A stretch of 64,000 nt of DNA, taken from positions 124,001 through 188,000 of IMG/VR virus record IMGVR_UViG_3300046808_001241. One strand, written 5' to 3'. Positions 19,143 to 57,616 of the stretch are shown here, piece by piece. Position 1 is the first letter of the stretch; each line of letters starts with the position of its first letter. The notes below the pieces were generated by a model, which saw only the letters and a list, made by a program, of their open reading frames with translations, was not told where the DNA came from and ran no database searches. The position numbers and the translations under genes are program-made.

Positions 19143-19925
19143 TTAGAATTTTATGCAGTAAAGAAGAGGAATGTTTCTAGGGCGACTAGTTCCTGATGTC
19201 CCTTCCGAATTGCCTTTTAAAGCAACCCCAGCAGTTCTAGGAACAGCGGACATTGATGCTCCGCTGTAATCAGATATGGAATAATCATCTACTCCCAATG
19301 TATTTCTGCTAGCAACTTCTGAAGTGCCTGTAACCGATGTTGACCACACCGCAAAATTATTGTTGTCTACGGCCATTAACGATCCTTTTTGCCAAACACC
19401 TATTCCTCTTCCGCTATCAATTCCTCTGGAATCATCCCATGCTCTTACAAACTCTCCTCTAAAATCAGGAAGTCTAAAAGTAGTAGAACCATCTCCTTGG
19501 CTAAAAGATCCTGTAGCACTAGTCGAATACCATGCTGTATCTGTGACTAAATTTCCACTTGCTTGTGCAAAAGTCCACAAATTTGAATAGGTAGATCTGG
19601 ATAAAGATGCTCCGTTTAGTTTAATCCAACCACTGGGAGCAGTTGTTGAAGGAAAAGCCATCACAGAACCAACAGGTACAACAGAGGTAGTAGCAGAAAG
19701 AGTCCTCGTAGAGGCATTCCAATCTAAATCAATAGTTGGACTATCAAAAACGTTTACGGAAGCATCAGGAACACTTGCACTTAATTCACAAACAGCTGCA
19801 GAAAGAGCTGCAAAGTTTCCATTAATCTTTGGAAGAGAAGCTCCAATACATTCATCGCCGTCTATATACTGTACATTGACACAAGACATACTTTTAATTA
19901 TTACAACTAACCATTTTCTGAACAA
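19143..19925 (-). CDS. Short fibre: CIGDSL-type anchor plus phage tail-collar domain (likely start MSCVNV)
   Basis: ECIGASLPKINGNF; PVGSV.AF....AP.GW.KLNG...SR..Y..LW...FRLPDFRGEFVRAWD..RG.D.GR; ends RPRNIPLLYCIK. Confidence 0.85.
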   Translation of the reverse strand: MFRKWLVVIIKSMSCVNVQYIDGDECIGASLPKINGNFAALSAAVCELSASVPDASVNVFDSPTIDLDWNASTRTLSATTSVVPVGSVMAFPSTTAPSGWIKLNGASLSRSTYSNLWTFAQASGNLVTDTAWYSTSATGSFSQGDGSTTFRLPDFRGEFVRAWDDSRGIDSGRGIGVWQKGSLMAVDNNNFAVWSTSVTGTSEVASRNTLGVDDYSISDYSGASMSAVPRTAGVALKGNSEGTSGTSRPRNIPLLYCIKF

Positions 19926-22900
19926 GTTGGATCAAAATAATCAAATAATAATTCTAAATTTGTCCAAAGTTGGTTCGACAACCGATTTATAACAGCATTG
20001 GTTACGATTTCGTTTTGACCAAGTATTAGGTCGTCTTTCGAATATACAGGAGCTCTATATGACTTGCAACCAGTTTCAGAATAAAATAATGAAGTTCTAA
20101 ACAGTTCGATGTTATCCCACAACCGATGGAATGATTTCAAATAAACCCAAGGTTGAATATATTCTTCTTTATGAACAAGAATTTCATGTAAGTCCCAATA
20201 AAGTTTTTCTGAAATTACTGCTTTTACGTCAGTAATTTTCATTAGATCTGGAATTTTTAAAATCTTATCCCCAATTGTTACATAAATGTTTCTGAACTTA
20301 TCTTGCATGATAGAATTGTACCCTTGCAAGATAGCTCCTGAACCACACTTATATTCATTTAATAAGAGCTCAAATAAGGTTCCAGTTCTAAAAAACTTTG
20401 TAATTCCAAAGTCATGAGTAATGTAAATTACTTCCCTATTAAAACTTGTATTAATCTTTTTAGGATTTATTACTTCAGCTGGCCAACTATACTCAAACAA
20501 ATACACTCCTTCTGAATCGAAAACATATATAGCTTTAGGAGTCAAGCAATGAGTATTTTGCTGAGAGTCAACACAAACTGATATTGGTGCGTTGTCTAAA
20601 AATTTATCGCTTGTTATTACTTTTTGGCTTTTACCATTGAATGTAAATTTTTTGACACACTCATTTCCTGTATCAGCAATCCAAACATCATGATCTTGAT
20701 CTATATGAATATCGCTTGGGTTATTCAATCCTTGAGGAGTTGTTGCTAAGCCAAAAGTACCCCATGATGTAAACAACTTAAAGGAATCTTCCTTAATAGA
20801 AAATACACTCACTTTAGATAAGACATTATCTAATACAAACACTTTATTTTCATCGGATGCAACGCCTACGATATTTTGGAACGAGAACAGCTCATCAGCA
20901 GCTCCTCTTCTTGCAAGATAGGTTGCAACATAATCAGTTTTAATTAAATGAATTTCTGTTGGATATGCAACTACTAAACGATCTAAAGTACTAATATGTT
21001 CTGCGTCAACTAAGCTACATCTTTGAGTAAACGAACAAGACGGAATCTGAAAATATTGACTATCAATTGTAGAAATCTTCCAGTTGTCCCTGTCACAGTT
21101 CAGAGACTCAGAGTCAGATTCACATTTTTCAAACTTCCATTTTTTAGCAAGATCGGAAGCACATTTTGTATCTTTCCACTTAACGTTTAATTCAGAAACA
21201 TTACAGCGTCTTGATTTCCACTTCCATTCGATACAATATTTTCCTAAGCACGTCGGATCGGTTTGAGAACCTTCACATTCGTGATATTCCCATGTTAATG
21301 GAAAGTTTGTTCCTTCACATTCCAAAGCTGCCCAATTTGCTTCTAATTCAACGTTCGTGGGACATTCAAGATCCTGCCAAACGTAAACCGGAGTAGTGGT
21401 TTCAATTGTTGTAGAAGCAGCTCCTCTGGGTCCAAGCCATCCGTAAAATTTATTTTTTGATTTGTAAAGCCTTGTATATTTGTTGAGATCTTCTAAAGCA
21501 TTATAAATTTTTTCCAAAACACTGTTAACATTGTCTGCAACTGCCCATTCATTAGGAGTCATTCTTGGAGTTTGATTGTAAGGCAACTCAACAGGAGTAA
21601 ACTCTGTTTGAAAATAATCTTCATTTACTTCATCATATTGCTGAACAATTTCAACCATTCCCGGAAACACCACAGTTGTTGGTTGAGAAATATTCGTATT
21701 GGTATTCTTAAGCAAGGCAGTAGCAGATAGATCAGCTACTCCAATCTGATCGAATATCATCGTTCCTGATAAACTAGATCCAGATAAAGTCAAAGTAGTA
21801 GGAGATAGTTCTGATTGCAAAACTATATTTTCAAGTTGATAAGGAGCACTCGGAGTTCCAACAGAGAAAATTTCTACAGGATTGTTTTTGATATTAAAAT
21901 AGTTTTTAACAAACAATTTTGCAAAAGGAACTGGAGATACCGTAGCGCTTACATCAAATGTTTGAGTAGTTTGTTTTGGAATCCAATCAAAGGGAGTTGC
22001 AGAAATTACAATAGTCTTTGTTGCTGAAGTATATACGGCAACTGTAGTATTAAACGTCGAGGCGCATTTAAAATAATCTAAGTTGAGATCTTTATCATAG
22101 CTTAAACCGAATTGATAAGCATAAATGCTAGGCAGAAAGCTTGTTCCTGAGAACGAATCGTATTCCCCACCCCACTCCCCAATATCAGATGTGGCTTCAA
22201 CTCCCCACTTTGATCCATTATATGTTTCTGTTAAAACTCCGGAAGCAGAAGGAACGGTTATAATTCCCAAAAATTTTTGAGAAGAATAATCAAATGGCAA
22301 CGAGAACGAAGGTTGAGAAAACGGAGAATCGAACGAAACTGGAGTAGAGCTTGGATACGACCTTATTTCGATGTCTTCTTTTAAATAGCTATTTGAAGAA
22401 CTTGTTCCTCCCGTAAGGTTCTGAGTCGAGGTGAAGTACGGATAAAACTCTAAATTGCCTGTATTATCTTTATACGTTAAAAGAGGAGCTGTGGAAGGAA
22501 TTGCATTAGTTGTTACAAAAAGACTAACAGGATAAGATTGTTCTAAATCCGGTTCTGATGTAATTGTAGTTGTTGCTGTAGCAGTATTGACCAAAACAAC
22601 ATCTAATAAAGAGGTTGCATCTGAAGTATTCAATATTTCTGTTACACTATTGCCAACAAACCAATTTGCAGTTGCTCCATTGGTTGTCGTTGAAGAAAGT
22701 CTAACAACTTCTGTGTGGCCTTCCCCATAGAAAAATGCTCCTTCTGATTGCGTATAGTTTGAGGAATTTAAATTGATCTGTTGAACTGTTCCTCCTACAT
22801 TTTTAATAACAGAGCTGGGATAGACGATAAACTCTGCTGTCGGAATTGTTGCAACAAACACAGAAGAGAGTTGAAACTCTGCTACAGGTTCAAAATCAGG

Positions 22901-23182
22901 ACTTGCAGTAGAAACAGATACAGTAATAGAACAGACGCAAGGAGTGGTGCAACTAAAGTTGCGAGATGTTTGAAAGGTAAAATCGACATTATTCGAAACA
23001 AATTGAGCAGGAGTTCCGTTATTAAGAGCTGAAGTTACATAGTATTGTGTTCCAAGTTCTTCATCAGGTAAAAGCAAATCGCTTAATTTGATCGAAACTG
23101 TATATGGACTTGCAGAAGTAAGTCTATAAAACAACGAGCTATTAGAAGTTCGTTCAAAATTTGCAAACAAATCAAGAGCCAT
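19907..23182 (-). CDS. Large baseplate/tail protein with Cys/Trp-rich segment and NHL beta-propeller
   Basis: NHL repeat GLNNPSDIHIDQDHDVWIADTGNECVKKF; W..xxC repeats; AATAAATA at 23192-23199. Confidence 0.65.
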   Translation of the reverse strand: MALDLFANFERTSNSSLFYRLTSASPYTVSIKLSDLLLPDEELGTQYYVTSALNNGTPAQFVSNNVDFTFQTSRNFSCTTPCVCSITVSVSTASPDFEPVAEFQLSSVFVATIPTAEFIVYPSSVIKNVGGTVQQINLNSSNYTQSEGAFFYGEGHTEVVRLSSTTTNGATANWFVGNSVTEILNTSDATSLLDVVLVNTATATTTITSEPDLEQSYPVSLFVTTNAIPSTAPLLTYKDNTGNLEFYPYFTSTQNLTGGTSSSNSYLKEDIEIRSYPSSTPVSFDSPFSQPSFSLPFDYSSQKFLGIITVPSASGVLTETYNGSKWGVEATSDIGEWGGEYDSFSGTSFLPSIYAYQFGLSYDKDLNLDYFKCASTFNTTVAVYTSATKTIVISATPFDWIPKQTTQTFDVSATVSPVPFAKLFVKNYFNIKNNPVEIFSVGTPSAPYQLENIVLQSELSPTTLTLSGSSLSGTMIFDQIGVADLSATALLKNTNTNISQPTTVVFPGMVEIVQQYDEVNEDYFQTEFTPVELPYNQTPRMTPNEWAVADNVNSVLEKIYNALEDLNKYTRLYKSKNKFYGWLGPRGAASTTIETTTPVYVWQDLECPTNVELEANWAALECEGTNFPLTWEYHECEGSQTDPTCLGKYCIEWKWKSRRCNVSELNVKWKDTKCASDLAKKWKFEKCESDSESLNCDRDNWKISTIDSQYFQIPSCSFTQRCSLVDAEHISTLDRLVVAYPTEIHLIKTDYVATYLARRGAADELFSFQNIVGVASDENKVFVLDNVLSKVSVFSIKEDSFKLFTSWGTFGLATTPQGLNNPSDIHIDQDHDVWIADTGNECVKKFTFNGKSQKVITSDKFLDNAPISVCVDSQQNTHCLTPKAIYVFDSEGVYLFEYSWPAEVINPKKINTSFNREVIYITHDFGITKFFRTGTLFELLLNEYKCGSGAILQGYNSIMQDKFRNIYVTIGDKILKIPDLMKITDVKAVISEKLYWDLHEILVHKEEYIQPWVYLKSFHRLWDNIELFRTSLFYSETGCKSYRAPVYSKDDLILGQNEIVTNAVINRLSNQLWTNLELLFDYFDPTCSENG

Positions 23183-23203
23183 TATGCTTATTATTTATTG
23201 CTG

Positions 23204-36700: not shown

Positions 36701-37004
36701 GAGTTCCATAAGCACTCGGAAGCTGAGTAAAAATCAAAACATCTCGAAAGATGTAATCAACATCAACATCCGTTTGATCGGTTAATAAAAACCCTTCGTC
36801 CGTCCAAGCTGATAAACCAACTCTATAAACTCCAGGAAATCCATATGTAGCTGTGACAGAAGGAGTGTTATATTCAAATAATCCATTTCCTAGATCCCAT
36901 GAAAATTGAGTATATTCGGCTGGAAATTCTGCTGTGTATATGAAATCTGTTGCATATACATTGCCTTTTTGAGATTCCGGAGTAACTGTGAAATAGTTAG
37001 GCAT
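33720..37004 (-). CDS. Baseplate-associated protein with PKD domain and beta-propeller
   Basis: FSWDLGNG...TYGFPGVYRVGL; repeated ISIDRFSNIWISL, INPENNVWVA, LDRSNNLWVTH. Confidence 0.65.
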   Translation of the reverse strand: MPNYFTVTPESQKGNVYATDFIYTAEFPAEYTQFSWDLGNGLFEYNTPSVTATYGFPGVYRVGLSAWTDEGFLLTDQTDVDVDYIFRDVLIFTQLPSAYGTPSVKSDSPFTIELTSSKIDQPLSIVLQAFNTNSVPSYAVPEKWEFLVPRWRFVDAETDQDLDGPIVLKTNPIYRNNKVVAVSGSASFYYVDDLASGGGCPLLLAATLSTERFTYPPESLRYPYYSYSNSEVARAVISWQINDAIPTRLKVTENYLSDIHPIKWSNVPIPVMITCEFDPTLLDEFGNASTQPSKVLSYPRTNELGGVNKVKLVLSAEGGSLIPEDYYTVEVDGTSYNSSEAPLYFKAFDEQDNTTSGYLFTTITPLSPLSSSVVVAVSTIAANQETGSSTLAFSFPDGYPIYANVYVSHPNVSTINRIDIVTYSSTICGNIQYYKDLGILVEGSASYVSVPVLTAANLANYQLSGTSNVYGMAFDPIQNKLYATDADQDVLYVLNGGLGINQTIPISSYTGDDYNVPSHISIDRFSNIWISLYSREVLLKLDSSLNLVLSATPNTTLGLSAEGSMLVSPPIVETDSNNDAWACYSHTISSALIKFDGDTGAELFRATSLPLTSVPISLTINPENNVWVACRDSNKIQLHSGTDGTLLKTIEGAIRPSYIMLDRSNNLWVTHGYNFLSKYNNTTETFTHYKFYGATKSFEEVSGYTPEDIHKAYYENEIWGGLTVDVFDRVWVVDSEENVLFVFKTSDPFGSLNTFELIPTANTNYVVIGGTNYISALPEEKVRSAQAGGDWSGNRWYQKYSGSYSSLPVRGSSTPFNVYDLNNSFNIAKVNEEFDCAGYFKSLALPEILKENPILFDEFLSAVAGDGILTKEDIGRVAYERIANFVQTHGDFETAEITQLLSFAEQLSVPANIYGTDFPVEVSRLINLFSVPKHRLRGQVVYETDLNKNIGPVLSEASFVSAGQYIFAKDRIYSDKYQLVYVAPLSAGNILIDIQNERDILTINNMSIELPSPNLKYQLSAIQVEGLREPIFDNYYFFEYNEEQIGYKGNIINWDSDFTTVDYTLSSYEEWYGDNGLVETMFNNILTKRLISDN

Positions 37005-38815: not shown

Positions 38816-38816
38816 A

Positions 38817-46986: not shown

Positions 46987-47373
46987 CTATTTAGGCTTAG
47001 TTGGCCAGACTACTTCTTCAGGGGTTTTAAATGTAGTTGGAACGTCTCTTAGAGTCTGACGATAAGCTAGCCATGCTTCTTTGGAAGGCTTTGGATTAGC
47101 ATCTGGAAAGACAGACCAATCAGAGTCTTTTAAAAGAGCATCGCGTTGGGATCTAATTTGTTCCCAAGTAAGAGGATCAACAGGTTCTGGTGTGTTACCT
47201 TTTTCGAGCCAAGCAAGATATGCTTGGTAATCGCTATTAGTAGGATCAAATGCGAAACTAACTTGCGGTGTCACCCCAACGCTCATAGCGTGATTTGGAA
47301 CAATTTGACTTGGTGAGGTTTTATAAAGTTTGTACATCATAAGGTTTAATATTATAATTCGCATCCAGTCCAC
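46987..47373 (-). CDS. Tail fibre assembly chaperone (paralog of 18752..19138)
   Basis: DPTNSDYQAYLAWL.KGNTPEP; W.QIR.QRDALL..SDW...KPSKEAWL.YRQ.LRD.P. Confidence 0.8.
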   Translation of the reverse strand: MDWMRIIILNLMMYKLYKTSPSQIVPNHAMSVGVTPQVSFAFDPTNSDYQAYLAWLEKGNTPEPVDPLTWEQIRSQRDALLKDSDWSVFPDANPKPSKEAWLAYRQTLRDVPTTFKTPEEVVWPTKPK

Positions 47374-48254
47374 AAGATTCTACTGCCAGCAGTTTGACAT
47401 TGCAAATCATATACAGCAGAACTTATAACTCCGCTTCCGCCACCAAGTTGTGCATGGCCAACAGTTAGACTAGCCCATAAAAATTGAAATGTTGCTGTCG
47501 AAAATGGTACCCCGCTAACAAGAAAAGTGCCTGACACACTTACTCCTGTTGGAGGAATTCGTGGAGTGGTGATAAATTGAAACAAAACACTTACATAGCT
47601 GGGTGTAGAGTGTCCACGACCCAAACAAATTGTTTCATACCCTGATGTGTAATTATATGCTGGTAAATACCTCTGACACAAAGCGAGTTCAGTTCCAATA
47701 GGTCTGTGCTCAAAAACAGTAGGAACGTTTCCTTTTTCAAGCTGAGGTAATGAAAAAGTTCCTCCAACGAAACTTACTGTAACATTTGATCCTCCTGTTA
47801 AAGTAAACGTTTCGCCTTTTGTTCTTGCTGTTCCATTTACTGTAGCAGTGGCTGTTCCGGTCCAATTTAAAACATAAGTTCCAGATTCAACGTTCAGTCC
47901 TTCTACTACCTGCTCTACTCCTCCTGCAGGAGCCGTAAAAGTAGCTATGTTCTGGGATGTCAAAAAGGATAAATTCTGACCAGAAGTAACAACTCTCCAT
48001 CTATCTACCGTGTATTGATTTGCTTGAGTCGTTGTTGCTCCAGAGATGTAGCCTCTTTGATTAATAAGACCTTGAGCGTTGATGAGTTTGTTTCTAAAGC
48101 AAAAGTTCAAGCTTGGGATTGAGCTTCTATTTTCAAGCTCACAAACAGCAACATCCAAATTCTTAAAATTATTATTAATTTTTACGAGAGAATTGCCAAT
48201 ACATTCTGTTCTTTCAATGTTTTGAACATATTGATCACCAGTGCAAGTAGCCAT
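47352..48254 (-). CDS. Fibre/receptor-binding protein with CIGDSL-type anchor
   Basis: ECIGNSLVKINNNF..LDVAVC; FRNKLIN....INQRG, YTVDRW, QLEKG.V.T.FE.RP.G.EL.LCQRY. Confidence 0.75.
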   Translation of the reverse strand: MATCTGDQYVQNIERTECIGNSLVKINNNFKNLDVAVCELENRSSIPSLNFCFRNKLINAQGLINQRGYISGATTTQANQYTVDRWRVVTSGQNLSFLTSQNIATFTAPAGGVEQVVEGLNVESGTYVLNWTGTATATVNGTARTKGETFTLTGGSNVTVSFVGGTFSLPQLEKGNVPTVFEHRPIGTELALCQRYLPAYNYTSGYETICLGRGHSTPSYVSVLFQFITTPRIPPTGVSVSGTFLVSGVPFSTATFQFLWASLTVGHAQLGGGSGVISSAVYDLQCQTAGSRILWTGCEL

Positions 48255-48280: not shown

Positions 48281-50095
48281 TTAACGACTAACTTCTTCCC
48301 AATCCATAGAAGCAAGCATTCCCGAACCATTAACAGTATCCGTAGAAGCAACTAAAGTAATTTCATATGGAGTCTTTGTTAAATTGTTTCGTTCTAATTG
48401 GAATTTGAATAAAGCCTCTTTAAGAATATCTAAGTTTGGAGAGCCTTGGTTAGAAGCATTCAAGAAGCCACTTGCAAGGATTCTTCCTCCTGCATAGCTT
48501 GTTCCGGTTATATTATACTCAACAGCGCTGTCATCCCCAGCATCAACCCAACTTCCTCCGCTTGTAGCACCGCTAGCTTTTATTTGCCAATTATAGTTAA
48601 TGCCATTTCCTGTTCCAAGAATTGACAGAGCGGTAAGAATAACAATGGCATCTAACCTATCAGGAGTTGTTTTTAACTTAATTGAAATAATTGGATAATA
48701 CGTATTTGTTGCTGCAAATGTTCTTGGTGTAGTAATTGGAATGCTGACTGCTTGTTGCAGACCTCTTAGTTCGTAACCGCCTTCAGAAATTACTGTGGAG
48801 CAGACTTGTTTTAGAGTGCGAGAACCAGACGTTGCACCTTTATTAGTAATTTCATATCTTAAAGGTAAGGAAGCAGTTGTAATGTATGTAGAAGCAATTA
48901 AATTTGCGTGATGGAATGAATGACAGACAACGAATTGACCATTAATAACAAGGCCACATCTTACCGTTCCGACCCCAAGCCATTCAATATCCATCCAAAA
49001 GATTTGAGCTTTTGTAATGTCAAGCGTGAGACCAGAAGGGCCGTTTCCGTCAAGTTTGTCCCCATTCCATGCAGAAAGAGGAACAATTGTTTCAGAGGAA
49101 GGAGAGCCATTAACAAGACTTCTTTCAACAAAGCTAATTGTTCCATCATCCAGCTGAATATAAATTCCATTATCTTGGCCAAAGTAACCAACTCTTTGTC
49201 GAAGATTGGTTGCAGAAGGAGCCATGATAAACGTGTTCATGACTTGTAAAGATTTCCCAGCTTGATAGCTAAAGACTTTTGTTGTTTCCCGGATGACAGA
49301 AGAACCAGACAAGTTACTGACTGTCATGTCAATCAATCCTTGATTTTGGTTGAATGAGGTAGAACCCCCGACTGCAGTTAAAGAAGACCAAAGATTGTTG
49401 TCTCGATACCTGTGAGAAGAATCAAACAAGGTTAGAGGACTGGATGTTCTTAGACGACCAAATGCATCAAAGGTTGGAGAGTGCGCAAAAGTAACAGGAA
49501 ACCCAACAGAAGGATCAACGGTTGCAGTAATTGGATTTGTTACATTAACATTTAAAGATGACGTTGCAGAAACAACAGTTACATTATTATTGTTGAGATC
49601 TTTTAAAGCAATTGAGTTAAGAACATTAACTCCAGTCGTTGGATTAGTAACGGTAATAGAACCAGAGACTCCAACAGTATTAGAAATATTAACAGCAGTT
49701 ACTGGAGCAACTTCAAAGACTCTTAGAGCACTCAGAGTTTTATTGACTGCTGCAAAGTTCCCAGCTTTGTCCCCAATTGTTATGTCATCAACAGAAGATT
49801 CTAAGTCCTGAGTAAGAACCTTGAGAGCATTTCCTTCTGAACCTCCTAATTGAACGATGGTAGCTCGAATTGTATGATTGACTCCATCTGTTAGTTCTAC
49901 TGCTCCAATGTTAATATCCGAAGCACTTAAAGAGATTGAAAGATCGCTTAAGTTTGTAATATAACCAGCACGAGCAAATAAAGGTCTATTGGCATCGTTT
50001 TCAACAGGAACCCAAGAAAATGTTTCGGCCATTCCAACATTATATGAAGGAGGTTGACCAGGAGTGCCAGTAAGTTTTGGAGTAAGAGTAGCCAT
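48281..50095 (-). CDS. Virion structural protein
   Basis: N-terminus shared with 2826..3443; DAFGRLR.S.P.TLFDS, RET..VF.YQ.GKS, WLGVG.VR.G domain seen in phage structural proteins; GATAAGTA at 50103-50110. Confidence 0.65.
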   Translation of the reverse strand: MATLTPKLTGTPGQPPSYNVGMAETFSWVPVENDANRPLFARAGYITNLSDLSISLSASDINIGAVELTDGVNHTIRATIVQLGGSEGNALKVLTQDLESSVDDITIGDKAGNFAAVNKTLSALRVFEVAPVTAVNISNTVGVSGSITVTNPTTGVNVLNSIALKDLNNNNVTVVSATSSLNVNVTNPITATVDPSVGFPVTFAHSPTFDAFGRLRTSSPLTLFDSSHRYRDNNLWSSLTAVGGSTSFNQNQGLIDMTVSNLSGSSVIRETTKVFSYQAGKSLQVMNTFIMAPSATNLRQRVGYFGQDNGIYIQLDDGTISFVERSLVNGSPSSETIVPLSAWNGDKLDGNGPSGLTLDITKAQIFWMDIEWLGVGTVRCGLVINGQFVVCHSFHHANLIASTYITTASLPLRYEITNKGATSGSRTLKQVCSTVISEGGYELRGLQQAVSIPITTPRTFAATNTYYPIISIKLKTTPDRLDAIVILTALSILGTGNGINYNWQIKASGATSGGSWVDAGDDSAVEYNITGTSYAGGRILASGFLNASNQGSPNLDILKEALFKFQLERNNLTKTPYEITLVASTDTVNGSGMLASMDWEEVSR

Positions 50096-50319: not shown

Positions 50320-50334
50320 AATGTTATTTAGTAT

Positions 50335-51711
50335 TTAAAATTTATTATTAAACGGAGAAGTAACAAAATTCATATCAAGAGAAACCGTGTCATATGTATT
50401 TGTTGGATCGTAGATGCGGGCGGTTGTGCTGTCATGTGGAACGCAAAATACTTTTCCGTTTTGCATGAGTACTGCACCAAATCCTGACCCTCCTCCAGTA
50501 AAAACTGCACTTGAAGTGATTAAAGTATCCGATACAGGATCGTATATCTTGGCATTTGTTGTAGATGCGTAGGATAAAGGTGGAATGAACACTTTTCCAT
50601 TAGGAAGAATAACTCCACCAGCAGCAAACAAACCTCCTGGATATGTTCCGCTTGGTACAGTAGTTGTATCCGTTATAGGATCATAAATCCTAGCAGTAGT
50701 GTTAGAAGCAGGAACGCAAAAAACTTTTCCGTTAGGTAATAGAACTGCTCCTAGAGAAGAACTGCTTGATGCAAATGTTCCGCTTGGAGTAGTTAAGGTG
50801 TCTGTAACAGGATCATAAATTCTTGCAGTAGGACCATCTTCAGGATTGCAAAATACTCTACCGTCTGAAAGAAGTACTGCTCCCGAAAAAGAATATGCTG
50901 GAAACGTTCCACCCGCAATAGTTGATGAATTTGTTGACGGATTATAAATTACAGATGGTCCAGAAGTACCCATGTGTCTTAGACAATAAACTCTACCGTC
51001 TGGAAGTAATACTCCTCCATAATAATTATCAGGAAAACTTCCACCAGCAATACTTACGGTATCTGTAGTGGGATTGTATATTCTAGGACTATTACCTTGA
51101 TTTGGGATACAAAATACTCTTCCATCTGGAAGCAAAACTCCCCCATTCGAAAAATAACCTCCTGGATACGTTCCGTTCGGAACGGTTGTAGTATTGGTTA
51201 TTGGATCATATATTCTAGCTGTAGTGCTAAAGCAAGGAACACAAAACACTCTTCCGTCTCGCATTAGAACTCCTCCAATAAAAGCGGACCCACCCGGAAA
51301 GGTCCCATTTGGAGTAGTCAATCGATCCCCAACAATCACATCGTTATTCCTAATAGTATCTAACAAGGCAGCTCTATAATTGACCCATCCAGACCCAATT
51401 TGATTATTTGTAGCGCTTGTTTGAGGAGTTGAGTTCCAAGTTGGAAATGGTCTTGCTCCTCCCCATTGCGTCCCATTGAATGTCATCATCTGACCAGAAG
51501 AAGCTCCAGAAACGCTAACAACTGCTGATAAGACTTTTGAAGTGCTTTGATAAGTCAAATCAATATTAGCAGAATCAACAATATTTAAACTTCCTCCAGT
51601 AGCAGATAAGCTTAAAAGGTTTGCAGAAAGTGTTTGGAAAGCTCCATTGAGATATTCAAGAGAGTCCCCAATACATTGATCTTCAGAAATTGGAATGCCA
51701 GCGAGTGTCAT
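50335..51711 (-). CDS. CIGDSL anchor plus 7-bladed kelch-like beta-propeller (paralog A)
   Basis: Seven G(G/A)VL..(D/N)G(R/K)V...RIY(D/N)P blades. Confidence 0.8.
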   Translation of the reverse strand: MTLAGIPISEDQCIGDSLEYLNGAFQTLSANLLSLSATGGSLNIVDSANIDLTYQSTSKVLSAVVSVSGASSGQMMTFNGTQWGGARPFPTWNSTPQTSATNNQIGSGWVNYRAALLDTIRNNDVIVGDRLTTPNGTFPGGSAFIGGVLMRDGRVFCVPCFSTTARIYDPITNTTTVPNGTYPGGYFSNGGVLLPDGRVFCIPNQGNSPRIYNPTTDTVSIAGGSFPDNYYGGVLLPDGRVYCLRHMGTSGPSVIYNPSTNSSTIAGGTFPAYSFSGAVLLSDGRVFCNPEDGPTARIYDPVTDTLTTPSGTFASSSSSLGAVLLPNGKVFCVPASNTTARIYDPITDTTTVPSGTYPGGLFAAGGVILPNGKVFIPPLSYASTTNAKIYDPVSDTLITSSAVFTGGGSGFGAVLMQNGKVFCVPHDSTTARIYDPTNTYDTVSLDMNFVTSPFNNKF

Positions 51712-51719
51712 GTTAGTAT

Positions 51720-53099
51720 TTATGAGCCAAAGTTTACATATGGACTAGTAACAAAATTCATATCAAGAGAAACTGATTGATACGTCGAAGTTGGATCGTA
51801 AATTCTTGCTGTAGTACCGTTGTGCACAAACACTTTTCCGTTTTGCATTAAAGTTAATCCACCATATGATACAGAGCTCATTCCTATATCTACTGAGCGA
51901 CTCGTATCTGTCAATGGATCGTAAATGTGAGCGCCACCACCAAATCCAACTATTAATACTTTTCCGTTTGGAAGAACACAGGCATCTCCAGAACCAAAAT
52001 TAGAGCCCCCACTTGGTGTAGATACTGTATTGGTTATTGGATCATATATTCTTGCTGGAGCTGGGCTTGTATCACTCGCTGTAGTATAACTAGTGCAAAA
52101 AACTTTTCCGTTTGGAAGTAAAACCACCTTTGACGTAAATTGAGGCAGCCCTCCAACGGTTGTAGTCGTTAATGTAGTGACAGGGTCATATATTCTTGCT
52201 GTACCGTCACCTGCAAAAATAGGCACAAATATTTTTCCGTCAGGAAGAAGTGTAGCTGATTGAGCATATGCTCCTCCGGAAACGTAGGCATAAATTGGCG
52301 TAGCAGGCACGAAAACAGTTCCTGTAACAGGATCCCAAATATGTGCATAGCCACTATAACCCGGAATAGTAAATATTTTTCCACTAGGTAAAACTATAGC
52401 AACTACTCCTTGACTCGTTAACCCAGACCAAGATCCAGAATTTGTAACTGTTTCGGTTACATAATCCCAAATAGCTGCTTGAGGAGCTGTATGTGGATTT
52501 ACAAATACTCTTCCGTCTGGAAGCAAACAAGCTCCAATATATTCCGGACCTCCAAACGTTCCACCTGGAACTGTAATGGCATTTGTAGAAGGATTATAAA
52601 TACGAGCTGTAGTTGTATTTACTGGAGGTAAAAATACTCTTCCGTCTTTAAGTAGAATTCCTCTAGACCATAATCCATTTATTGTTCCGCTTGGAGTAGT
52701 CAATCTATCCCCAACAATGTCCCTATTATTCCTAATAACATCAGTCAGAGCTCTTTGATAATTTAAAAATCCGCTATTGCCAATTTGGTTATTAACAGCG
52801 CTTGTTTGAGGAGTTGAGTTCCATGTCGGAAATGATCTTGCTCCAACAAATGCTGACAAAGTGCTGCTATAAGTCATTCTTTGACCGTCTTGAGCAGTCA
52901 GTGCTAAAGTTGCTGTCAAGGTCTTTGTTGAAGAATTATAATCCAAATCAATAGTTGAAGAATCTTTGGCAGACAACGCATTAAAGCTTGCAGAAACGCT
53001 ATAAACGTTTGTAGAAAGAGTTTGAAAAGCGCTATTAATATATTGAAGAGAATCGCTTATGCACTGATCTTCTGAAATTGGAATGCCATTAAGAACCAT
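51720..53099 (-). CDS. CIGDSL anchor plus 7-bladed kelch-like beta-propeller (paralog B, diverged blades)
   Basis: Seven LL..G(R/K)(V/I)F blades; same linker and C-terminus as A and C. Confidence 0.8.
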   Translation of the reverse strand: MVLNGIPISEDQCISDSLQYINSAFQTLSTNVYSVSASFNALSAKDSSTIDLDYNSSTKTLTATLALTAQDGQRMTYSSTLSAFVGARSFPTWNSTPQTSAVNNQIGNSGFLNYQRALTDVIRNNRDIVGDRLTTPSGTINGLWSRGILLKDGRVFLPPVNTTTARIYNPSTNAITVPGGTFGGPEYIGACLLPDGRVFVNPHTAPQAAIWDYVTETVTNSGSWSGLTSQGVVAIVLPSGKIFTIPGYSGYAHIWDPVTGTVFVPATPIYAYVSGGAYAQSATLLPDGKIFVPIFAGDGTARIYDPVTTLTTTTVGGLPQFTSKVVLLPNGKVFCTSYTTASDTSPAPARIYDPITNTVSTPSGGSNFGSGDACVLPNGKVLIVGFGGGAHIYDPLTDTSRSVDIGMSSVSYGGLTLMQNGKVFVHNGTTARIYDPTSTYQSVSLDMNFVTSPYVNFGS

Positions 53100-53103
53100 A
53101 ATG

Positions 53104-54492
53104 TTAGTATTTATTTACGAATGGGCTTGTTACAAAATTCGTATCAAGAGTAATTGGTTGATAAGAATCTGTTGGATCATAGATGCGGGCGGTTGTGCTG
53201 TCGCAAGGCACTAAAAACACTTTTCCGTTAGGAAGGAGAACACCTCCAAAAAAAGGAAAACCAAGAGGATAATTCCCACTCGGCGTAGTCAATGTATCGG
53301 TAACAGGATCATATATTTTCGCTGTTGTGTTATTATTATTCGGAATACAAAATACTTTTCCGTTTGGAAGAAGAACTCCTCCAAAAAAAGATCCAGAATA
53401 CGTTCCAGCAGGTATTGTCAATGTGTCTGTTACTGGATCATAAATACGAGCGGTTGTAGAGGTATTTGGAACACAAAATACTTTTCCGTTTGGAAGAAGA
53501 ACGCCTCCTGCAAAAGCTCCTGCTGTAGGATACGTTCCTGTAGGGGTCGTTAATGTGTCTGTTGCTGGATTGTAAATACGAGCAGTTGCAGAGTTGTGTG
53601 GAACAGAAAAAACTCTACCGTCACCAAGAAGAACGCCTCCTATAAAAGCAAAAGTTCCTGTAGGATATGTTACTGTAGGGATCGTTAATGTGTCTGTTGC
53701 TGGATTGTAAATACGGGCAGTTGTGGATTGATTAGCTGGAAGACAAAATACTCTACCGTCACCAAGAAGAACACCACCCCTAAAGGCTCCACCTCCAGGA
53801 TATGATCCTGTTGGAGTTGATACAGTATTTGTTATTGGATCATAAATACGAGCGGTAGTGCTATAATATGGTACACAAAAAACTTTTCCGTTTGGAAGAA
53901 GAACGCCTCCTGCAAAGGCATAATTTCCAGGATATGATCCTAATGGAGTTGATACAGTATCTGTTATTGGATCATAAATGCGAGCGGTTGTAGAGTTGCT
54001 CGGTACACAAAATACTTTTCCGTCTGGAAGAATAACTCCTCCTTCAAACGCCTCGCTTCCCGTGTAAGTCCCATTTGGAGTAGTCAACCTATCTCCACTA
54101 ATGTCCCTATTATTCCTAATAACATCAGTAAGTGCTCTTTGCCAGTTTGCAAAGCCATTAATAGATGTTCCACTTAATTGCAAATTTTGAGCACTTGTTG
54201 CGGGAGTCGAGTTCCATGTTGGAAAAGGTCTTTGATCAACCCACTTTTGCTGGACTGCATCATAAGTCAAAGTTTCACCAGCAGAAGCAGGTACAGAAAT
54301 TGTTGCAGAAAGAACTTTCGATGAGCTGTTATAAAATAGAGCAACTTGGTCATTGCTTAGCACATTTAAATTTGCAGCTCCTAATGAAATTCCTTTAACA
54401 TTTGCCGAGAGGGACAAAAAAGCATTGTTGATTGTGTCTAATGAATCTCCAATACAATCATTTTCGGAGATAGGAATGCCGGACAAAACCAT
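53104..54492 (-). CDS. CIGDSL anchor plus 7-bladed kelch-like beta-propeller (paralog C, near-identical blades)
   Basis: Seven GGV(L/I)L(P/G)(N/D)G(K/R)VF..P...TARIY(D/N)P.T.T blades of about 43 aa, with visible DNA repeats. Confidence 0.8.
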   Translation of the reverse strand: MVLSGIPISENDCIGDSLDTINNAFLSLSANVKGISLGAANLNVLSNDQVALFYNSSSKVLSATISVPASAGETLTYDAVQQKWVDQRPFPTWNSTPATSAQNLQLSGTSINGFANWQRALTDVIRNNRDISGDRLTTPNGTYTGSEAFEGGVILPDGKVFCVPSNSTTARIYDPITDTVSTPLGSYPGNYAFAGGVLLPNGKVFCVPYYSTTARIYDPITNTVSTPTGSYPGGGAFRGGVLLGDGRVFCLPANQSTTARIYNPATDTLTIPTVTYPTGTFAFIGGVLLGDGRVFSVPHNSATARIYNPATDTLTTPTGTYPTAGAFAGGVLLPNGKVFCVPNTSTTARIYDPVTDTLTIPAGTYSGSFFGGVLLPNGKVFCIPNNNNTTAKIYDPVTDTLTTPSGNYPLGFPFFGGVLLPNGKVFLVPCDSTTARIYDPTDSYQPITLDTNFVTSPFVNKY

Positions 54493-54500
54493 GTGTATAT

Positions 54501-56489
54501 TTATTGGTTAAAATCCGTTTTCCAACCAAGTACATGAATTGGAATTAACATTTCGTCATTTGTTGCAGCTAGTGAACCTTCTGCTAAACTATTTCCTGGA
54601 CGCTTAACAAAGAATCTTACTATTTGACCTTCTTTGTTTCCTTTAAAATCTGTAGAAAGAGATGCAAAAGTTGTATAATTTATAATTCCATACTGAGCTG
54701 GATAAGCCGAAACTCTAACAACTTCGGTATTTGCAAAATCAAAATTATAATCAGTTCCTTGAGAAACTAATTTACCACCAAAATCCCATGAAACACTAGA
54801 AAGAGGAACTGTAGAAATACCACCTTCAACATCGCTGATCATTGCAAGATTGTATCTAAAATTGTTATTAACTTTTGAGAAATTACCTCCAACAAGAACT
54901 GAATTTTGATACTTCGTCAATGAACTATTGATTAAAGAAGGACCGTTCTGAATAGTTGGCTTCCAGTAAACATATTCCCCAGTTGATGTATCAGAAGTAA
55001 AGCTAGTCTTTTTAACAGAGCAGAGATAACTTTGGTGCTCGTCATTAATTCTTGTGAATCTTCCGTAGCAATAGATTTCAGAATTCGTGTCTTGATCTTG
55101 AGTTACGAAAGAAGTTACAGGACCATTAAACTTTGGTTTCCAAACTGGTTGAATTAACAATGAATTAGTTTGAATCTTATAAGAGACTGCATTGTAGTAA
55201 ACTGTCTGTGCTCCATTATCCCTTGGATTTGAGTTAAATTCAGAATCTGTAAAGCATCTGGAAAATTCACCACCAACATAAAGATAGATTGAACCACCAT
55301 CAGACGTTGTATCATCCACAGTTAGAGTGTAAACTGGACCATTAATAATTGGCTTCCAAGCAGCAAGTCTAACACCATTTTCGTCAATACAGCAAAGATT
55401 TTGACATGTTAGTGTTGTATTGGTGTTAATTTTAAACTGACCTCCGACAAAAATCTTTGTTCCAGAGTATGCAATAGAATTGATCGTACAAGGACCAGAG
55501 AAAATTGAAGAAATGTCAGATAACGAAGCTATTGGGTTTGATACAACAGTTGTTAAATCAATTCTGAATAACCCATTGGAAGTTAATCTAAGTCCAGAAA
55601 CAACAGAAGCACTTTGTGTTCCATAGTTAACATAGTCAAAAGCTCCTCCAACAAACAAGTAATTTCCAATAATTTGTACAGAGTTTACAGAGCCGTTAAC
55701 ATAAAATGGATAAGAGACTCCTGTGCTCTTATTATAGAGACAAAGACCTCTTCCTTTAAAGCCTCCTTGGAATGAACCGCCAACGATTAAGAAAGTAGAA
55801 TTAGAAGCAATTGTATCAACAGAACCCAGAGGACCTAAGTCACCTCCAGTTGAGAATGGATTAGAAATATACGAACCAGTAGCTGATAAAAGAGGCTCCA
55901 CTGCTCCAGCACTCAAGCTGATGACGCCAAATTTTCTTGAAACCGTTCCTCCAATTTCTAAAAATTCCCCACCAACATAAAGATCTGTTCCATCAACAAG
56001 TAAACTATTAACTGTATTATCAAACCAGATTGGACCTCTGGAAGAAACGGAAGAAGCACTATTCAAAGCATAGACTGTCATTCCATCAACTCCGGAAGCA
56101 GTCCACAGAAGGGTTACTTGAGGAATTCGATCGGTCAAGCAAATTGTAGAAAATGTTGCAAGAGGCTTTGGATCGGATGTTGAACTAACATATGGGAACG
56201 TCGTAACTTTTACAGAAGTTCCGTCAAGAAGAGAAATTGTAGAAGGAGAAGCAATAGAGGTTGATTCAAAATCCGTTTGCCAAGTAAAAGAATTCTTAGT
56301 AGAGATTTGAACTTCGTGTCTTTGTTGTTCCGTAATAGACTCTTCGATCATCGTTCCCAATCCAGCAATAACAGAAGGAACTTCACACAAGCCTTGATCA
56401 AGAGCAGAAAAATTAGTATTAAATGTTACTAAAGAATCTCCAATGCATTGATTGGCTCCAACTTGTTGTGTAAAATTACAAACTGACAT
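54501..56489 (-). CDS. CIGDSL anchor plus beta-propeller fibre protein
   Basis: QCIGDSLVTFNTNFSALDQGLC; repeated LYVGGEF/IVGGSF/FVGGAF/VGGNF blades. Confidence 0.75.
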   Translation of the reverse strand: MSVCNFTQQVGANQCIGDSLVTFNTNFSALDQGLCEVPSVIAGLGTMIEESITEQQRHEVQISTKNSFTWQTDFESTSIASPSTISLLDGTSVKVTTFPYVSSTSDPKPLATFSTICLTDRIPQVTLLWTASGVDGMTVYALNSASSVSSRGPIWFDNTVNSLLVDGTDLYVGGEFLEIGGTVSRKFGVISLSAGAVEPLLSATGSYISNPFSTGGDLGPLGSVDTIASNSTFLIVGGSFQGGFKGRGLCLYNKSTGVSYPFYVNGSVNSVQIIGNYLFVGGAFDYVNYGTQSASVVSGLRLTSNGLFRIDLTTVVSNPIASLSDISSIFSGPCTINSIAYSGTKIFVGGQFKINTNTTLTCQNLCCIDENGVRLAAWKPIINGPVYTLTVDDTTSDGGSIYLYVGGEFSRCFTDSEFNSNPRDNGAQTVYYNAVSYKIQTNSLLIQPVWKPKFNGPVTSFVTQDQDTNSEIYCYGRFTRINDEHQSYLCSVKKTSFTSDTSTGEYVYWKPTIQNGPSLINSSLTKYQNSVLVGGNFSKVNNNFRYNLAMISDVEGGISTVPLSSVSWDFGGKLVSQGTDYNFDFANTEVVRVSAYPAQYGIINYTTFASLSTDFKGNKEGQIVRFFVKRPGNSLAEGSLAATNDEMLIPIHVLGWKTDFNQ

Positions 56490-56497
56490 GATGTTAT

Positions 56498-56704
56498 TTA
56501 TTCAACCACTTCTACAACAGAAGCAGGAATCCCTACAAACAACCCACCATATACTGGAAAGTTTGCATTATAGTAAGTGTCTCCGTCTTGTAAAAAAGTG
56601 GCTTTAACTTCTCCAGCTTCTCCGTTTAATGCATCACTAATGTCATCCCATTTTGCGCCAAATTCTGAGACCAGTCCCGTTTTTTTTATTTTAATTTTAG
56701 ACAT
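56498..56704 (-). CDS. Hypothetical protein
   Basis: 68 aa, overlapping the upstream stop. Confidence 0.5.
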   Translation of the reverse strand: MSKIKIKKTGLVSEFGAKWDDISDALNGEAGEVKATFLQDGDTYYNANFPVYGGLFVGIPASVVEVVE

Positions 56705-57371
56705 AAAATATATTCATTACCATGCTATTTGCTGCTTGAGCGTTAGTATTGTTGTTGTCAGCAATTCCCGCTACTATTCTAAATGAAATTCCATTCTGGA
56801 ATTTAAAACCAGATGTTGGCCACCTAAGTCCTCCTCCACCTGCAAAGGTTTGGTACCAAAGCGACCAAGCAATTACAAAAATAGGAATGTCTGCAGAAGT
56901 TGGAGTAGTGGCTTTATCATAAAGTTTCAAATACATCATGGTTCCGTCATTTGAGGGCCATGAATTATAAGTTCCAGCTGAAAATGACATTTCCCCTATA
57001 ATTCCAGGCGAAGCTTTAACTACTGTAGCGTTTGTGGTAGCAGCATTAGTGTATCTAAAAATACTTGAATAACCTTCGACAGCAGGAGAAGAATCTATAA
57101 CTAATTGCGGAGTATCATAGATTACTTGTAGTTGATCTCCAGAAGAATGAGTGGATGTATCAACTTTAAGAGTTAAGACTTTTGTTCCGCTGTTCCAACT
57201 AAAGTAACCTGTACTAGATTGACCGGTTGCATAAAGAAGCGTTCCTCTTGTTTGATTAAGAACAGCAAGAAGACCAGCTATGTTAAATCCATTAACAGCG
57301 GAAAAGTCAAGAGTTCCAGCGTTTGCTGCACCTGGCGTAAAAGTGGGATTGGTTGATAGTATAGATTTCAT
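56697..57371 (-). CDS. Virion structural protein
   Basis: Y/FTF.P....G.L.F....LL.V.N.T....LY...D N-terminal pattern; C-terminal YLKLYDKAT.PT...P...F..GI module. Confidence 0.6.
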   Translation of the reverse strand: MKSILSTNPTFTPGAANAGTLDFSAVNGFNIAGLLAVLNQTRGTLLYATGQSSTGYFSWNSGTKVLTLKVDTSTHSSGDQLQVIYDTPQLVIDSSPAVEGYSSIFRYTNAATTNATVVKASPGIIGEMSFSAGTYNSWPSNDGTMMYLKLYDKATTPTSADIPIFVIAWSLWYQTFAGGGGLRWPTSGFKFQNGISFRIVAGIADNNNTNAQAANSMVMNIFYV

Positions 57372-57379
57372 ATATTAAT

Positions 57380-57616
57380 TTATCCAAAAATTAAAGCATA
57401 AGGAATGAGAGGAGCTTCTGCAGAAAGAGTCCTTGTGTAAGAATCAAAAGTTAGATCAACTGTTGGACTGTCGACAACATTAAAAGAATCTACAGCAGTT
57501 AATAGCTGACAAACATTATTCCCAAGCACGGAAAAATTCGAGTTGATCTTGGGAAGAGAGTCACCAATACACTCAGTACCTAAAATTGTTTGAATGGGAT
57601 TCTGTACACAAGACAT
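57380..57616 (-). CDS. Stand-alone CIGDSL anchor protein (78 aa)
   Basis: ECIGDSLPKINSNFSVLGNNVC...VVDSPTVDLTFDSYTRTLSA then LIPYALIFG*; GATAAATA at 57626-57633. Confidence 0.75.
   Translation of the reverse strand: MSCVQNPIQTILGTECIGDSLPKINSNFSVLGNNVCQLLTAVDSFNVVDSPTVDLTFDSYTRTLSAEAPLIPYALIFG

What the first reader, a model, noticed from the sequence alone, without database searches (positions are those of the whole stretch)
19143..57616. Seven-member fibre family sharing a Cys-containing 'CIGDSL..IN.NF..L' anchor with unrelated heads
ORFs 19143, 47352, 50335, 51720, 53104, 54501 and 57380 all start with (E/Q/D)CI(G/S)(D/N/A)SL..(I/L/F)N..F..L, and most continue with a DS.T(I/V)DL....(R/K).LSA-like segment. 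Their heads differ: tail collar, sugar-binding-like domain, three kelch propellers, another propeller, or none. The motif recalls the GD.L....KIN.NF..L N-terminal trimer domain of T4 gp9/gp10 but adds an invariant Cys. This looks like a plug-in receptor-binding arsenal competing for one baseplate site, possibly disulfide-locked.
Basis: partly seen in the sequence, partly recalled or inferred. Interest (0 to 1): 0.6.

Follow-up and report, generated by a model that had tools for sequence, protein, structure and literature searches.

The report
Shared cysteine anchor on phage fibres
An uncultured freshwater T4-like phage carries nine tail-fibre genes that begin with the same roughly 40-residue cysteine-bearing helical module and end in unrelated receptor-binding heads. 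This is a new version of the known plug-in fibre principle, and two of the nine are short adaptors that probably carry a separately encoded head.

Summary
A profile of the N-terminal module finds nine genes in the 217-kb genome, seven in the window and two outside. They score 52-80 bits and the next best ORF scores 8.

The module is always N-terminal. It has no Pfam or PHROG family and no match in 50,697 phage records. It does have 896 cluster representatives in metagenomes.

It is predicted as a short coil followed by a 27-residue helix with a clean heptad pattern, then a beta-hairpin 'DSxTIDL..TLSA' unit. Heads attached to it are typical receptor-binding domains: tail collar, Gp53-like_C, Kelch/RCC1 propellers, CBM, S74 and pectate lyase. 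The 19143-type anchor is 73-94% identical across proteins whose heads are unrelated, and the break falls right after TLSA.

Most members carry three cysteines. The first and third appear and disappear together, which suggests an internal staple. The 'ECIG' cysteine is 93% conserved, not invariant.

The resemblance to T4 gp9/gp10 is a short motif only and is not significant.

The 'headless' members are adaptors ending in ALIFG. Each is followed by a head gene starting ..TFTPGA, a pairing seen in 10 of 10 contexts, including unrelated phages. A complex prediction gave only weak support.

The idea of one shared baseplate site remains untested.

The parts
19143..19889 (-). Fibre 1 (248 aa). It has a three-Cys anchor (about 19755-19889), one DSPTIDLDWNASTRTLSA shaft unit and a tail-collar head. 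It is the last gene of the baseplate operon, in a gp12-like position.
   Evidence: 80 bits
18752..19138 (-). Tail-fibre assembly chaperone downstream of fibre 1.
   Evidence: PF16778, E 2e-18
47352..48254 (-). Fibre 2 (300 aa). It has a three-Cys anchor (MATCTGD..ERTECIGNSLVKIN) and no shaft unit. Its head is 89% identical over 126 aa to the head of a type-B-anchored fibre outside the window, and it has CBM-like leads.
   Evidence: (phrog_4492 tail fiber)
46987..47373 (-). Tail-fibre assembly chaperone downstream of fibre 2.
   Evidence: PF16778, E 1.2e-17
50335..51711 (-). Fibre 3 (458 aa). It has a single-Cys anchor subtype (M.L.GIPISEDQCIGDSL), a shaft unit and a Kelch-like propeller.
51720..53099 (-). 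Fibre 4 (459 aa), a paralogue of fibre 3 (196/366 identical in the head).
53104..54492 (-). Fibre 5 (462 aa), a paralogue of fibre 3 (229/382 identical in the head).
54501..56489 (-). Fibre 6 (662 aa). It has a three-Cys anchor (MSVCNFTQ..QCIGDSLVTFN) and a large head, possibly a propeller. Orthologues sit in the same slot in L008 and L088.
57380..57616 (-). Adaptor (78 aa). It has a three-Cys anchor, one shaft hairpin and the C-terminal end ALIFG. This is the 'headless' member.
56697..57371 (-). Separately encoded head (224 aa, MKSILSTNPTFTPGA..). Its N-terminal 90 aa are conserved and its C-terminal jelly-roll is variable. It starts 8 nt after the adaptor's stop codon.
56498..56704 (-). Small third gene of the cassette (68 aa, ..YNANFPVYGGLFVGIPASVVEVVE). 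It may be an assembly factor. It is conserved in L005, L088 and L090.
48281..50095 (-). Virion structural protein inside the fibre cluster. It served as the conserved marker for fetching relatives.
   Evidence: phrog_1645, E 1.3e-141
37004..39317 (-). gp6-like and gp25-like baseplate wedge genes that head the operon ending in fibre 1.
   Evidence: phrog_219 E 1.1e-38; phrog_261 E 2e-27

Best explanation
The nine genes encode tail fibres or receptor-binding proteins that are probably trimeric. They are built from three exchangeable parts.

1. An N-terminal attachment module of about 40 residues. It consists of an extended N-terminal arm, a turn at E-C-I-G-D/N-S, and a helix of about 27 residues. 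The helix's conserved I/L/I/F/L/V/L residues sit at heptad a/d positions, so it should form the core of a coiled coil. In most members the first Cys (position 3 or 4) and the third Cys (helix b position, 'VCxL') probably staple the arm to the end of the helix once the particle is in oxic water. The nearly invariant middle Cys sits at the apex that would face whatever the module plugs into.

2. Zero, one or more beta-hairpin shaft units (NVxDSxTIDLxWNxSTRTLSA).

3. A head that recombination swaps freely just after 'TLSA'.

The module holds each fibre on the virion. Several conserved anchor subtypes exist, so the fibres probably occupy several related sockets, or branch from one another, rather than all competing for one site.

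Two members (57380 and L005:8086) are adaptors. They consist of anchor, one hairpin and the C-terminal ALIFG, and they present a separately translated head (56697-57371 and its paralogue). That head's conserved N-terminal domain (..TFTPGA..GT..) docks on the ALIFG end, possibly helped by the small third gene.

What is shown: the family, its exclusively N-terminal position, the helix prediction, the head diversity, the mosaic boundary, and the gene-order rule for adaptor and head.

What is inferred: trimer formation, the disulfide, the docking site, and physical binding of adaptor to head.
For: Family and specificity:
- Nine hits at 52-80 bits against 8 bits for the next ORF.
- 896 cluster representatives at E<=1e-3, nearly all matching at residues 1-45 of proteins 39-976 aa long.

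Structure:
- AF2 model with 137 rows, mean pLDDT 84.5, helix 17-43 and hairpin 55-66.
- Column statistics show hydrophobic residues at spacing 4-3-4-3.

Fibre nature:
- Pfam scan of 110 family members gave Collar 12, Gp53-like_C 11, Peptidase_S74 4, RCC1 3, CBM_4_9 2 and pectate lyase 1.
- PF16778 chaperones lie downstream.
- The baseplate operon context fits.

Modularity:
- Anchor plus shaft is 46-62 of 60-66 residues identical in 13 proteins whose heads fall into at least five unrelated groups.
- The 47352 head is 112/126 identical to the head of a fibre that carries a different anchor.
- L008 keeps the anchor subtypes in the same slots but with other heads and copy numbers.
- Five related records carry 3, 3, 0, 4 and 4 anchors.

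Cysteines:
- CCC in 125-130 sequences, -C- in 18-19, mixed in 1-3.
- Joint losses occur in close relatives, for example L006 (MAFC..ALCQL) against P0103 (MAFL..SLYAL), and in P0152.

Adaptor and head:
- The upstream protein ends in A(L/I)IFG in 10 of 10 contexts where the head has the TFTPGA domain. This includes adaptors with unrelated N-termini and a Chitinophagaceae MAG.
- It is absent in L096, where the head lacks that domain.
- Complex prediction with three copies of each chain gave weak support. The score was 0.45 (runs 0.45, 0.49, 0.41) and the best control was 0.00. The mark was reached by 58 of 80 solved complexes and 2 of 110 mismatched pairs. A pass at 0.60 or under was seen for only 7 of those 80 solved complexes and for both mismatches that passed. 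The runs agree in at least 89% of contacts and the partner's pLDDT is at least 78.
Against: - There are no virion proteomics and no structure.
- Trimerisation of the anchor was not tested.
- No docking partner was found.
- The Cys1/Cys3 covariation rests on a poorly resolved tree of 46 columns. Only 2 well-supported independent pairs exist, and the sign test cannot reach significance.
- The top-hit set is biased toward sequences that resemble the Cys-bearing profile.
- The complex prediction is weak, and by the tool's own calibration such a pass is more often wrong than right without a strong prior.
- Some anchor genes, here and in L007, lie next to the major capsid gene, so attachment to the neck or head is not excluded.
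Confidence: 0.65

Rival explanations
1. One reading: all members compete for one and the same baseplate socket. Virions would then be mosaics or carry alternative fibres, and the ECIG cysteine would lock the fibre to the socket by a disulfide.
For: - One module is shared by nine genes.
- Copy number varies from 0 to 9 among related records that share the conserved phrog_1645 structural gene; other virion genes were not compared.
- The middle Cys is 93% conserved and independent of the other two.
- T4 offers a precedent for a proposed gp10-gp7 disulfide (PMC3004832), and phage Milano has a disulfide network (PMC10811340, listed).
Against: - Anchor subtypes differ strongly (30-60% identity) and are kept slot by slot in L008 and L088. 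That suggests distinct partners.
- Two members are adaptors.
- Relatives with N or Y in place of the Cys exist.
- Three cysteines around a threefold axis cannot all pair with a single partner.
Confidence: 0.15
2. The module is a diverged homologue of the N-terminal domain of T4 gp9/gp10 and docks on a gp7-like wedge protein. The 1094-aa protein encoded just after the gp6-like gene would be the candidate.
For: - T4 gp9 and gp10 carry G-D-x-L...K-I-N-x-x-F-x-x-[IL] at residues 21-38 and 16-33.
- Like this module, both sit at the extreme N-terminus of trimeric baseplate-attached proteins. The gp9 N-domain binds gp7 (PMC3004832).
- The gene order gp25-gp6-large proteins-fibre resembles T4's 6-7-8-9-10-11-12.
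Against: - There is no Pfam hit to any family on the anchor.
- A profile search of PDB sequences gave no T4 hit among its matches.
- hhalign gives probability 22% (gp10) and 7% (gp9) over only 10-16 columns.
- The spacing between GDxL and KIN is 4 residues shorter.
- T4 has no cysteines there.
Confidence: 0.25
3. The module is only a trimerisation or folding nucleus (an N-terminal 'foldon'), or a handle for a chaperone. Attachment to the virion would lie elsewhere, or some members would be neck or head fibres rather than baseplate fibres.
For: - The clean heptad helix fits.
- The profile's only PDB matches are trimeric coronavirus heptad repeats, at chance level.
- Anchor genes lie next to the major capsid gene in L005 and L007.
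Against: - There is nothing N-terminal to the module that could serve as an attachment.
- In known fibres the conserved N-terminus is the attachment end while the C-terminus varies (PMC6872550, listed).
- The 78-aa adaptors have no other domain that could attach.
- The very high conservation of the non-core residues (E14, G17, S19, N24, N26) exceeds what a coiled coil needs.
Confidence: 0.15

Closest known systems
Anchor-branch receptor-binding protein systems of Klebsiella phages and Ackermannviridae (Latka et al. 2019, PMC6872550; PMC11414711; PMC13352976)
   Same: Several RBPs in one genome share a conserved N-terminal anchor or docking peptide while their C-terminal receptor-binding parts are unrelated and exchanged horizontally. 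Adaptors and secondary RBPs dock on primary ones.
   Different: - The anchor sequence is unrelated.
- No T4gp10-like branching domain was detected by Pfam.
- It carries a conserved Cys triad.
- The host lineage is an uncultured freshwater T4-like phage.
- Heads are mostly lectin, propeller or collar domains rather than depolymerases.
T4 gp9 / gp10 N-terminal domain (PF07880; PDB 1S2E, 5IV5)
   Same: It sits at the extreme N-terminus of baseplate-attached trimers, shares a short GDxL..KINxxFxx[LI] motif and is helical.
   Different: There is no statistically significant similarity. The loop is 4 residues shorter, the cysteines are absent from T4, and the T4 proteins are fixed structural connectors, not a multigene family with swapped heads.
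T2/S16-type gp37-gp38 fibre tip and Mu/P2-type retained fibre chaperones (my own knowledge, not tested here)
   Same: A fibre ends in a conserved C-terminal element, and the next gene's product binds to it and supplies or shapes the receptor-binding tip.
   Different: No sequence relationship is known. Here the junction is a five-residue C-terminal ALIFG and a beta-domain starting ..TFTPGA. It occurs behind adaptors as short as 69 aa.
T4 gp12 short tail fibre (tail collar fibre)
   Same: Fibre 1 (19143) has a PF07484 collar head and sits last in the baseplate operon.
   Different: It is 248 aa against 527 aa, has a different N-terminus and almost no shaft.

Membership tests
T4 gp9/gp10 N-terminal domain (PF07880) | Significant sequence or profile match to gp9/gp10 or to the Pfam model | tested here: not met
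   The Pfam scan of all seven window proteins at E<=0.1 gave no such hit. The anchor profile against PDB sequences gave no T4 chain at E<=10. hhalign gave probability 22% for gp10 and 7% for gp9.
T4 gp9/gp10 N-terminal domain (PF07880) | N-terminal GDxL...KINxxF motif in a helical trimerisation segment | tested here: inconclusive
   The motif is present in T4 gp9 and gp10 read from NC_000866. Here the spacer is 4 residues shorter. A helix is predicted. The trimer was not tested.
T4 gp9/gp10 N-terminal domain (PF07880) | Binds a gp7-like wedge protein | not testable with these tools
Anchor-branch RBP systems | Several RBPs of one genome share an N-terminal anchor and differ in their C-terminal receptor-binding domains | tested here: met
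   Nine genes share the anchor. The head domains are diverse and there is a mosaic boundary.
Anchor-branch RBP systems | A primary RBP carries T4gp10-like branching domains that receive secondary RBPs | tested here: not met
   Pfam gave no gp10-like hit on the fibres or on the large baseplate proteins. Structural similarity was not tested.
Phage tail collar fibre (PF07484) | Collar domain above the gathering score | tested here: met
   19143: 52 bits against a cut-off of 24, E 6.7e-14. phrog_523 tail collar fiber, E 1.5e-38.
Tail fibre assembly chaperone (PF16778) | Domain above the gathering score, encoded directly downstream of a fibre | tested here: met
   18752-19138 scored 66.4 bits. 46987-47373 scored 63.9 bits.
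Kelch/RCC1-type beta-propeller heads | Repeated blade motifs that match propeller models | tested here: inconclusive
   50335 scored RCC1_2 27.7 bits against a cut-off of 22, and matched PDB 7on6 (a designed Kelch propeller) at E 1.5e-5 over residues 166-396. 51720 had Kelch_6 at E 0.023. 54501 had only DUF5122 at E 0.066. No structure was predicted for these.

The most novel reading that the evidence does not exclude
Two new, general plug-and-socket junctions of phage fibres are present here.

(a) An N-terminal coiled-coil anchor stabilised by a covarying cysteine pair. A third, apical cysteine makes a redox- or metal-dependent link to the virion. Fibre retention would then be locked only after release into oxic water.

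(b) A universal five-residue C-terminal 'ALIFG' plug on fibres and mini-adaptors. It receives a separately translated head through a conserved 'TFTPGA' beta-domain. This junction is shared by unrelated phages of different bacterial phyla and would be usable as a natural standard connector for swapping receptor-binding heads.
Probability: 0.3. Interest if true: 0.75.

Novelty: new variant of a known kind. Interest (0 to 1): 0.55.

Why it matters
Host range in tailed phages is set by exchangeable receptor-binding proteins, and the rules of how they are attached are known for only a few cultured groups.

This work defines an unannotated attachment module. It has no Pfam or PHROG family but about 900 sequence clusters, and this genome and its near relatives come from freshwater metagenomes. 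The exchange boundary is sharply defined. The genome carries nine such fibres plus two more on a second anchor type.

The work also uncovers a conserved two-gene junction, ALIFG followed by TFTPGA, that spans unrelated phages. If the junction is physical, it would explain many 'orphan' short ORFs next to fibre genes. It would also give annotators a rule for recognising split fibres, and give laboratory phage work a natural connector to test.

The cysteine pattern offers a concrete, testable case of disulfide use in virion assembly in an oxic habitat.

Tried and rejected
- Programmed frameshift or read-through joining the 78-aa ORF to the next gene was rejected. The -1 frame has a TAA between the two genes, and the downstream ATG is in that frame after it. 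The same 35-nt junction occurs in the paralogous cassette and in L088.
- A Rosetta-stone fusion of adaptor and head was not found. In the syntenic slot L008 has a 185-aa anchor fibre with a different (Gp53-like) head plus a chaperone.
- megablast and tblastn against 50,697 phage records gave no real match for the anchor. The only hits were Gordonia minor tail proteins at E=10.
- The first related-loci run on the nine-member alignment failed because the alignment was not conserved enough. A four-member alignment found only two loci.
- T4-type late promoter TATAAATA is not enriched (4 found, 4.9 expected).
- Internal repeats that could give multiple sockets in the large baseplate proteins were not convincing by self-BLAST.
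- Foldseek searches of the adaptor and head models gave nothing below E 1e-3. VIA-align gave only common jelly-roll or CBM-like matches with Z up to 6.7 for head residues 95-224.
- The formal covariation test for Cys1/Cys3 was underpowered.
- psbA is absent, so this is not a typical cyanomyovirus.
- Complex prediction gave weak support only and is reported as such.
- RNA-library contigs identical to parts of 54501-57376 exist in one freshwater metatranscriptome run. They do not prove transcription and do not cover the adaptor gene.

Full report
**Context**

The window is bases 124001-188000 of a 217,182-bp IMG/VR virus record with direct terminal repeats. It has a T4-like layout:
- gp25-like and gp6-like baseplate wedge genes at 38817-39317 and 37004-38815;
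- ribonucleotide reductase genes and Hsp20;
- a phrog_1645 virion structural protein at 48281-50095.

The major capsid protein is only 34% identical to that of any phage in a 50,697-record collection. There is no psbA. Only freshwater and lake metagenomes hold the DNA. This is therefore an uncultured freshwater T4-like myovirus of unknown host.

**Checking the observation**

A strict pattern found nine ORFs genome-wide and none in 50 shuffles. An HMM of the module scored these nine at 52-80 bits and the next ORF at 8 bits. The two extra members lie in a second fibre cluster beside the major capsid gene, at L005:7069-7722 and L005:8086-8295.

The 19143 gene most likely begins at the ATG at 19889 (MSCVNVQ..), in line with its paralogues.

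Six of the nine have three cysteines (MSC.., ECIG, VCxL). The three Kelch paralogues have only the middle one.

**What the module is**

- No Pfam or PHROG model covers it. The PHROG hits on these proteins all start after residue 50.
- tblastn against the phage collection found nothing.
- Because the family scans left it open, I ran the exhaustive profile search once. It found 896 cluster representatives at E<=1e-3 and 131 at E<=1e-10. Nearly all match at residues 1-45 of proteins 39-976 aa long.
- Column statistics over 165 hits show near-invariant I10, E14, C15, I16, G17, S19, L20, I23, N24, N26, F27, L30 and C35. The hydrophobic residues at 16, 20, 23, 27, 30, 34 and 37 have heptad a/d spacing.
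- AlphaFold2 with a 137-row alignment predicts coil 1-16, helix 17-43 (pLDDT above 90) and a beta-hairpin at 55-66. The hairpin is the DSxT(I/V)DL..TLSA unit.

The same hairpin unit occurs two to three times in tandem in two fibres of the second cluster. Those fibres start with a different N-terminus, MAG..IS.L.DG..QPTD..PVARGS.

**Fibre nature and modularity**

A Pfam scan of 110 family members found these head domains:

| Head domain | Members |
|---|---|
| Collar | 12 |
| Gp53-like_C | 11 |
| Peptidase_S74 | 4 |
| RCC1-type propellers | 3 |
| CBM_4_9 | 2 |
| pectate-lyase-like | 1 |
| H-lectin | 1 |

In the window:
- 19143 has a collar head (E 6.7e-14).
- 50335 matches a designed Kelch propeller (7on6, E 1.5e-5). 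It has two paralogues at 50-60% identity.
- 47352 has CBM-like leads only.
- PF16778 chaperones follow 19143 and 47352.

Thirteen metagenomic proteins share 73-94% identity with 19143 over anchor plus shaft. Their heads fall into at least five unrelated groups, and the break comes right after 'TLSA'.

The 47352 head is 112/126 identical to that of a type-B-anchored fibre in the same genome, so heads move between anchor types.

The related contig L008 keeps the anchor subtypes in the same gene slots but with other heads and a different copy number. Five related records carry 3, 3, 0, 4 and 4 anchors. Only about 6 of 80 contigs with the phrog_1645 marker have the anchor nearby.

**Cysteines**

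Among the top hits the patterns are CCC in 125-130 sequences, -C- in 18-19, and mixed in 1-3. Joint loss of the first and third Cys appears in several lineages. One example is L006 against P0103, and another is P0152.

On a tree built with the Cys columns masked, the two traits change 6 and 7 times. Only two independent pairs lie on supported branches. Both go the same way, but the test is underpowered.

The middle Cys varies independently. It is replaced by N or Y in some relatives that keep the other two.

I read this as a probable Cys1-Cys3 staple within the anchor, plus a separate apical Cys of unknown role. Precedents for disulfides in phage tails exist: a proposed T4 gp10-gp7 bond (PMC3004832) and phage Milano (PMC10811340).

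**Relation to T4 gp9/gp10**

The recalled motif is real. Read from NC_000866, gp9 has GDILFDGGNKINSDFNAIYNAF and gp10 has GDYLRKGGIKINENFDELYYEL.

The similarity is not significant. The anchor HMM scores 1-2 bits locally. hhalign gives 22% and 7% probability. The PDB profile search returned only chance-level coiled-coil matches.

Functional analogy is plausible, since the gp9 N-domain binds gp7. Membership is not shown.

**The 'headless' members are adaptors**

Gene 57380-57616 (78 aa) ends in ALIFG. It is followed after 8 nt by a 224-aa gene (MKSILSTNPTFTPGA..) and then a 68-aa gene. The paralogous cassette sits at L005:8086-9129. A frameshift fusion is excluded.

The head family has 88 word-search hits. 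The N-terminal 90 residues are conserved (near-invariant TFTPGA..GT) and the C-terminus is variable.

In every context examined where the head has that N-domain, the upstream protein ends in A(L/I)IFG. The ten contexts are the window, L005, L088, L089, L090, L091/L092, L093 (a Chitinophagaceae MAG), L095, L097 and L098. The upstream proteins range from 69 to 417 aa or more and have unrelated N-termini. L096 has a head that lacks the N-domain, and it has no such neighbour.

The AF2 head model (pLDDT 81) has two beta domains. The C-terminal one is a common jelly-roll or CBM-like sandwich, with Z up to 6.7.

A complex prediction with three copies of each chain gave weak support:
- score 0.45 (runs 0.45, 0.49, 0.41), best control 0.00;
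- the mark was reached by 58 of 80 solved complexes and 2 of 110 mismatches;
- a pass at 0.60 or under was seen for only 7 of those 80 solved complexes and for both mismatches that passed;
- the runs agree in at least 89% of contacts, and the partner's pLDDT is at least 78.

The conserved gene order gives a good prior, so I consider binding likely but unproven.

**Verdict**

The family is real, larger than reported and specific. It is best described as a new N-terminal attachment module for exchangeable receptor-binding proteins. The principle is known from Klebsiella phages and Ackermannviridae (PMC6872550, PMC11414711), but the sequence is unrelated, it has a cysteine triad, and it comes with a split adaptor-head variant.

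The single-site competition idea, the disulfide lock to the baseplate and the gp9/gp10 kinship remain unproven.

Noticed in passing
L005:7069-11829 (genome 111069-115829, outside the window): A second fibre cluster lies beside the major capsid gene. It holds two more Cys-anchor genes, a paralogous adaptor/head/small-protein cassette, two fibres with a different N-terminus (MAG..IS.L.DG..QPTD..PVARGS) carrying 2-3 tandem 33-aa repeats, and three PF16778-like chaperones.
   Followed up: partly
L090, L091, L093, L095, L097, L098 (unrelated phage contigs and a Chitinophagaceae MAG): Proteins of 102 to 417 aa or more with unrelated N-termini all end in A(L/I)IFG. Each is followed within a few bases by a head starting ..TP.YTFTPGA.G.GT. 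This looks like a general two-gene fibre junction that I could not find described (motif search of papers).
   Followed up: partly
P0034 (133 aa) and P0041 (115 aa), metagenomic hits: These short proteins hold three and two tandem copies of the E-C-[IL]-G-D-S-[LR]..IN motif. Their meaning is unknown.
   Followed up: no
window 19907-23182 and 26576-28006 (-): These are baseplate-operon proteins with many cysteines: 21 in 1091 aa (13 of them between residues 607 and 722) and 12 in 476 aa. They share a weakly similar Cys-rich stretch (30% over 50 aa, E 5e-6). They may be disulfide-rich domains or candidate sockets.
   Followed up: no
window 41197-42900 (+) and 58859-59953 (-): These are homing-endonuclease-like genes. 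An HNH-family ORF (phrog_559, E 3.5e-111) lies between the small and large RNR subunit genes. A 364-aa ORF with an HNH hit flanks the fibre cluster, and an orthologue sits in the same place in L008.
   Followed up: no
window 12800-15451 and 32897-33715 (-): An 883-aa protein without cysteines has tail-fibre PHROG hits. It shares two repeated segments (28-35% identity) with the 272-aa protein inside the baseplate operon.
   Followed up: no
window 54501-57376: Contigs from one freshwater metatranscriptome library match parts of the 54501 fibre, the 68-aa gene and the 224-aa head with 0-1 differences. This hints at expression in nature but does not prove it, because DNA carry-over is possible.
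   Followed up: partly
window 57625-58095 (-): A 156-aa Cys-free protein of unknown function directly precedes the anchor cluster. It is conserved in the same position in L008 (64% identity), and L088 has a 158-aa gene in the same position that was not compared. It is a candidate partner or assembly factor.
   Followed up: no
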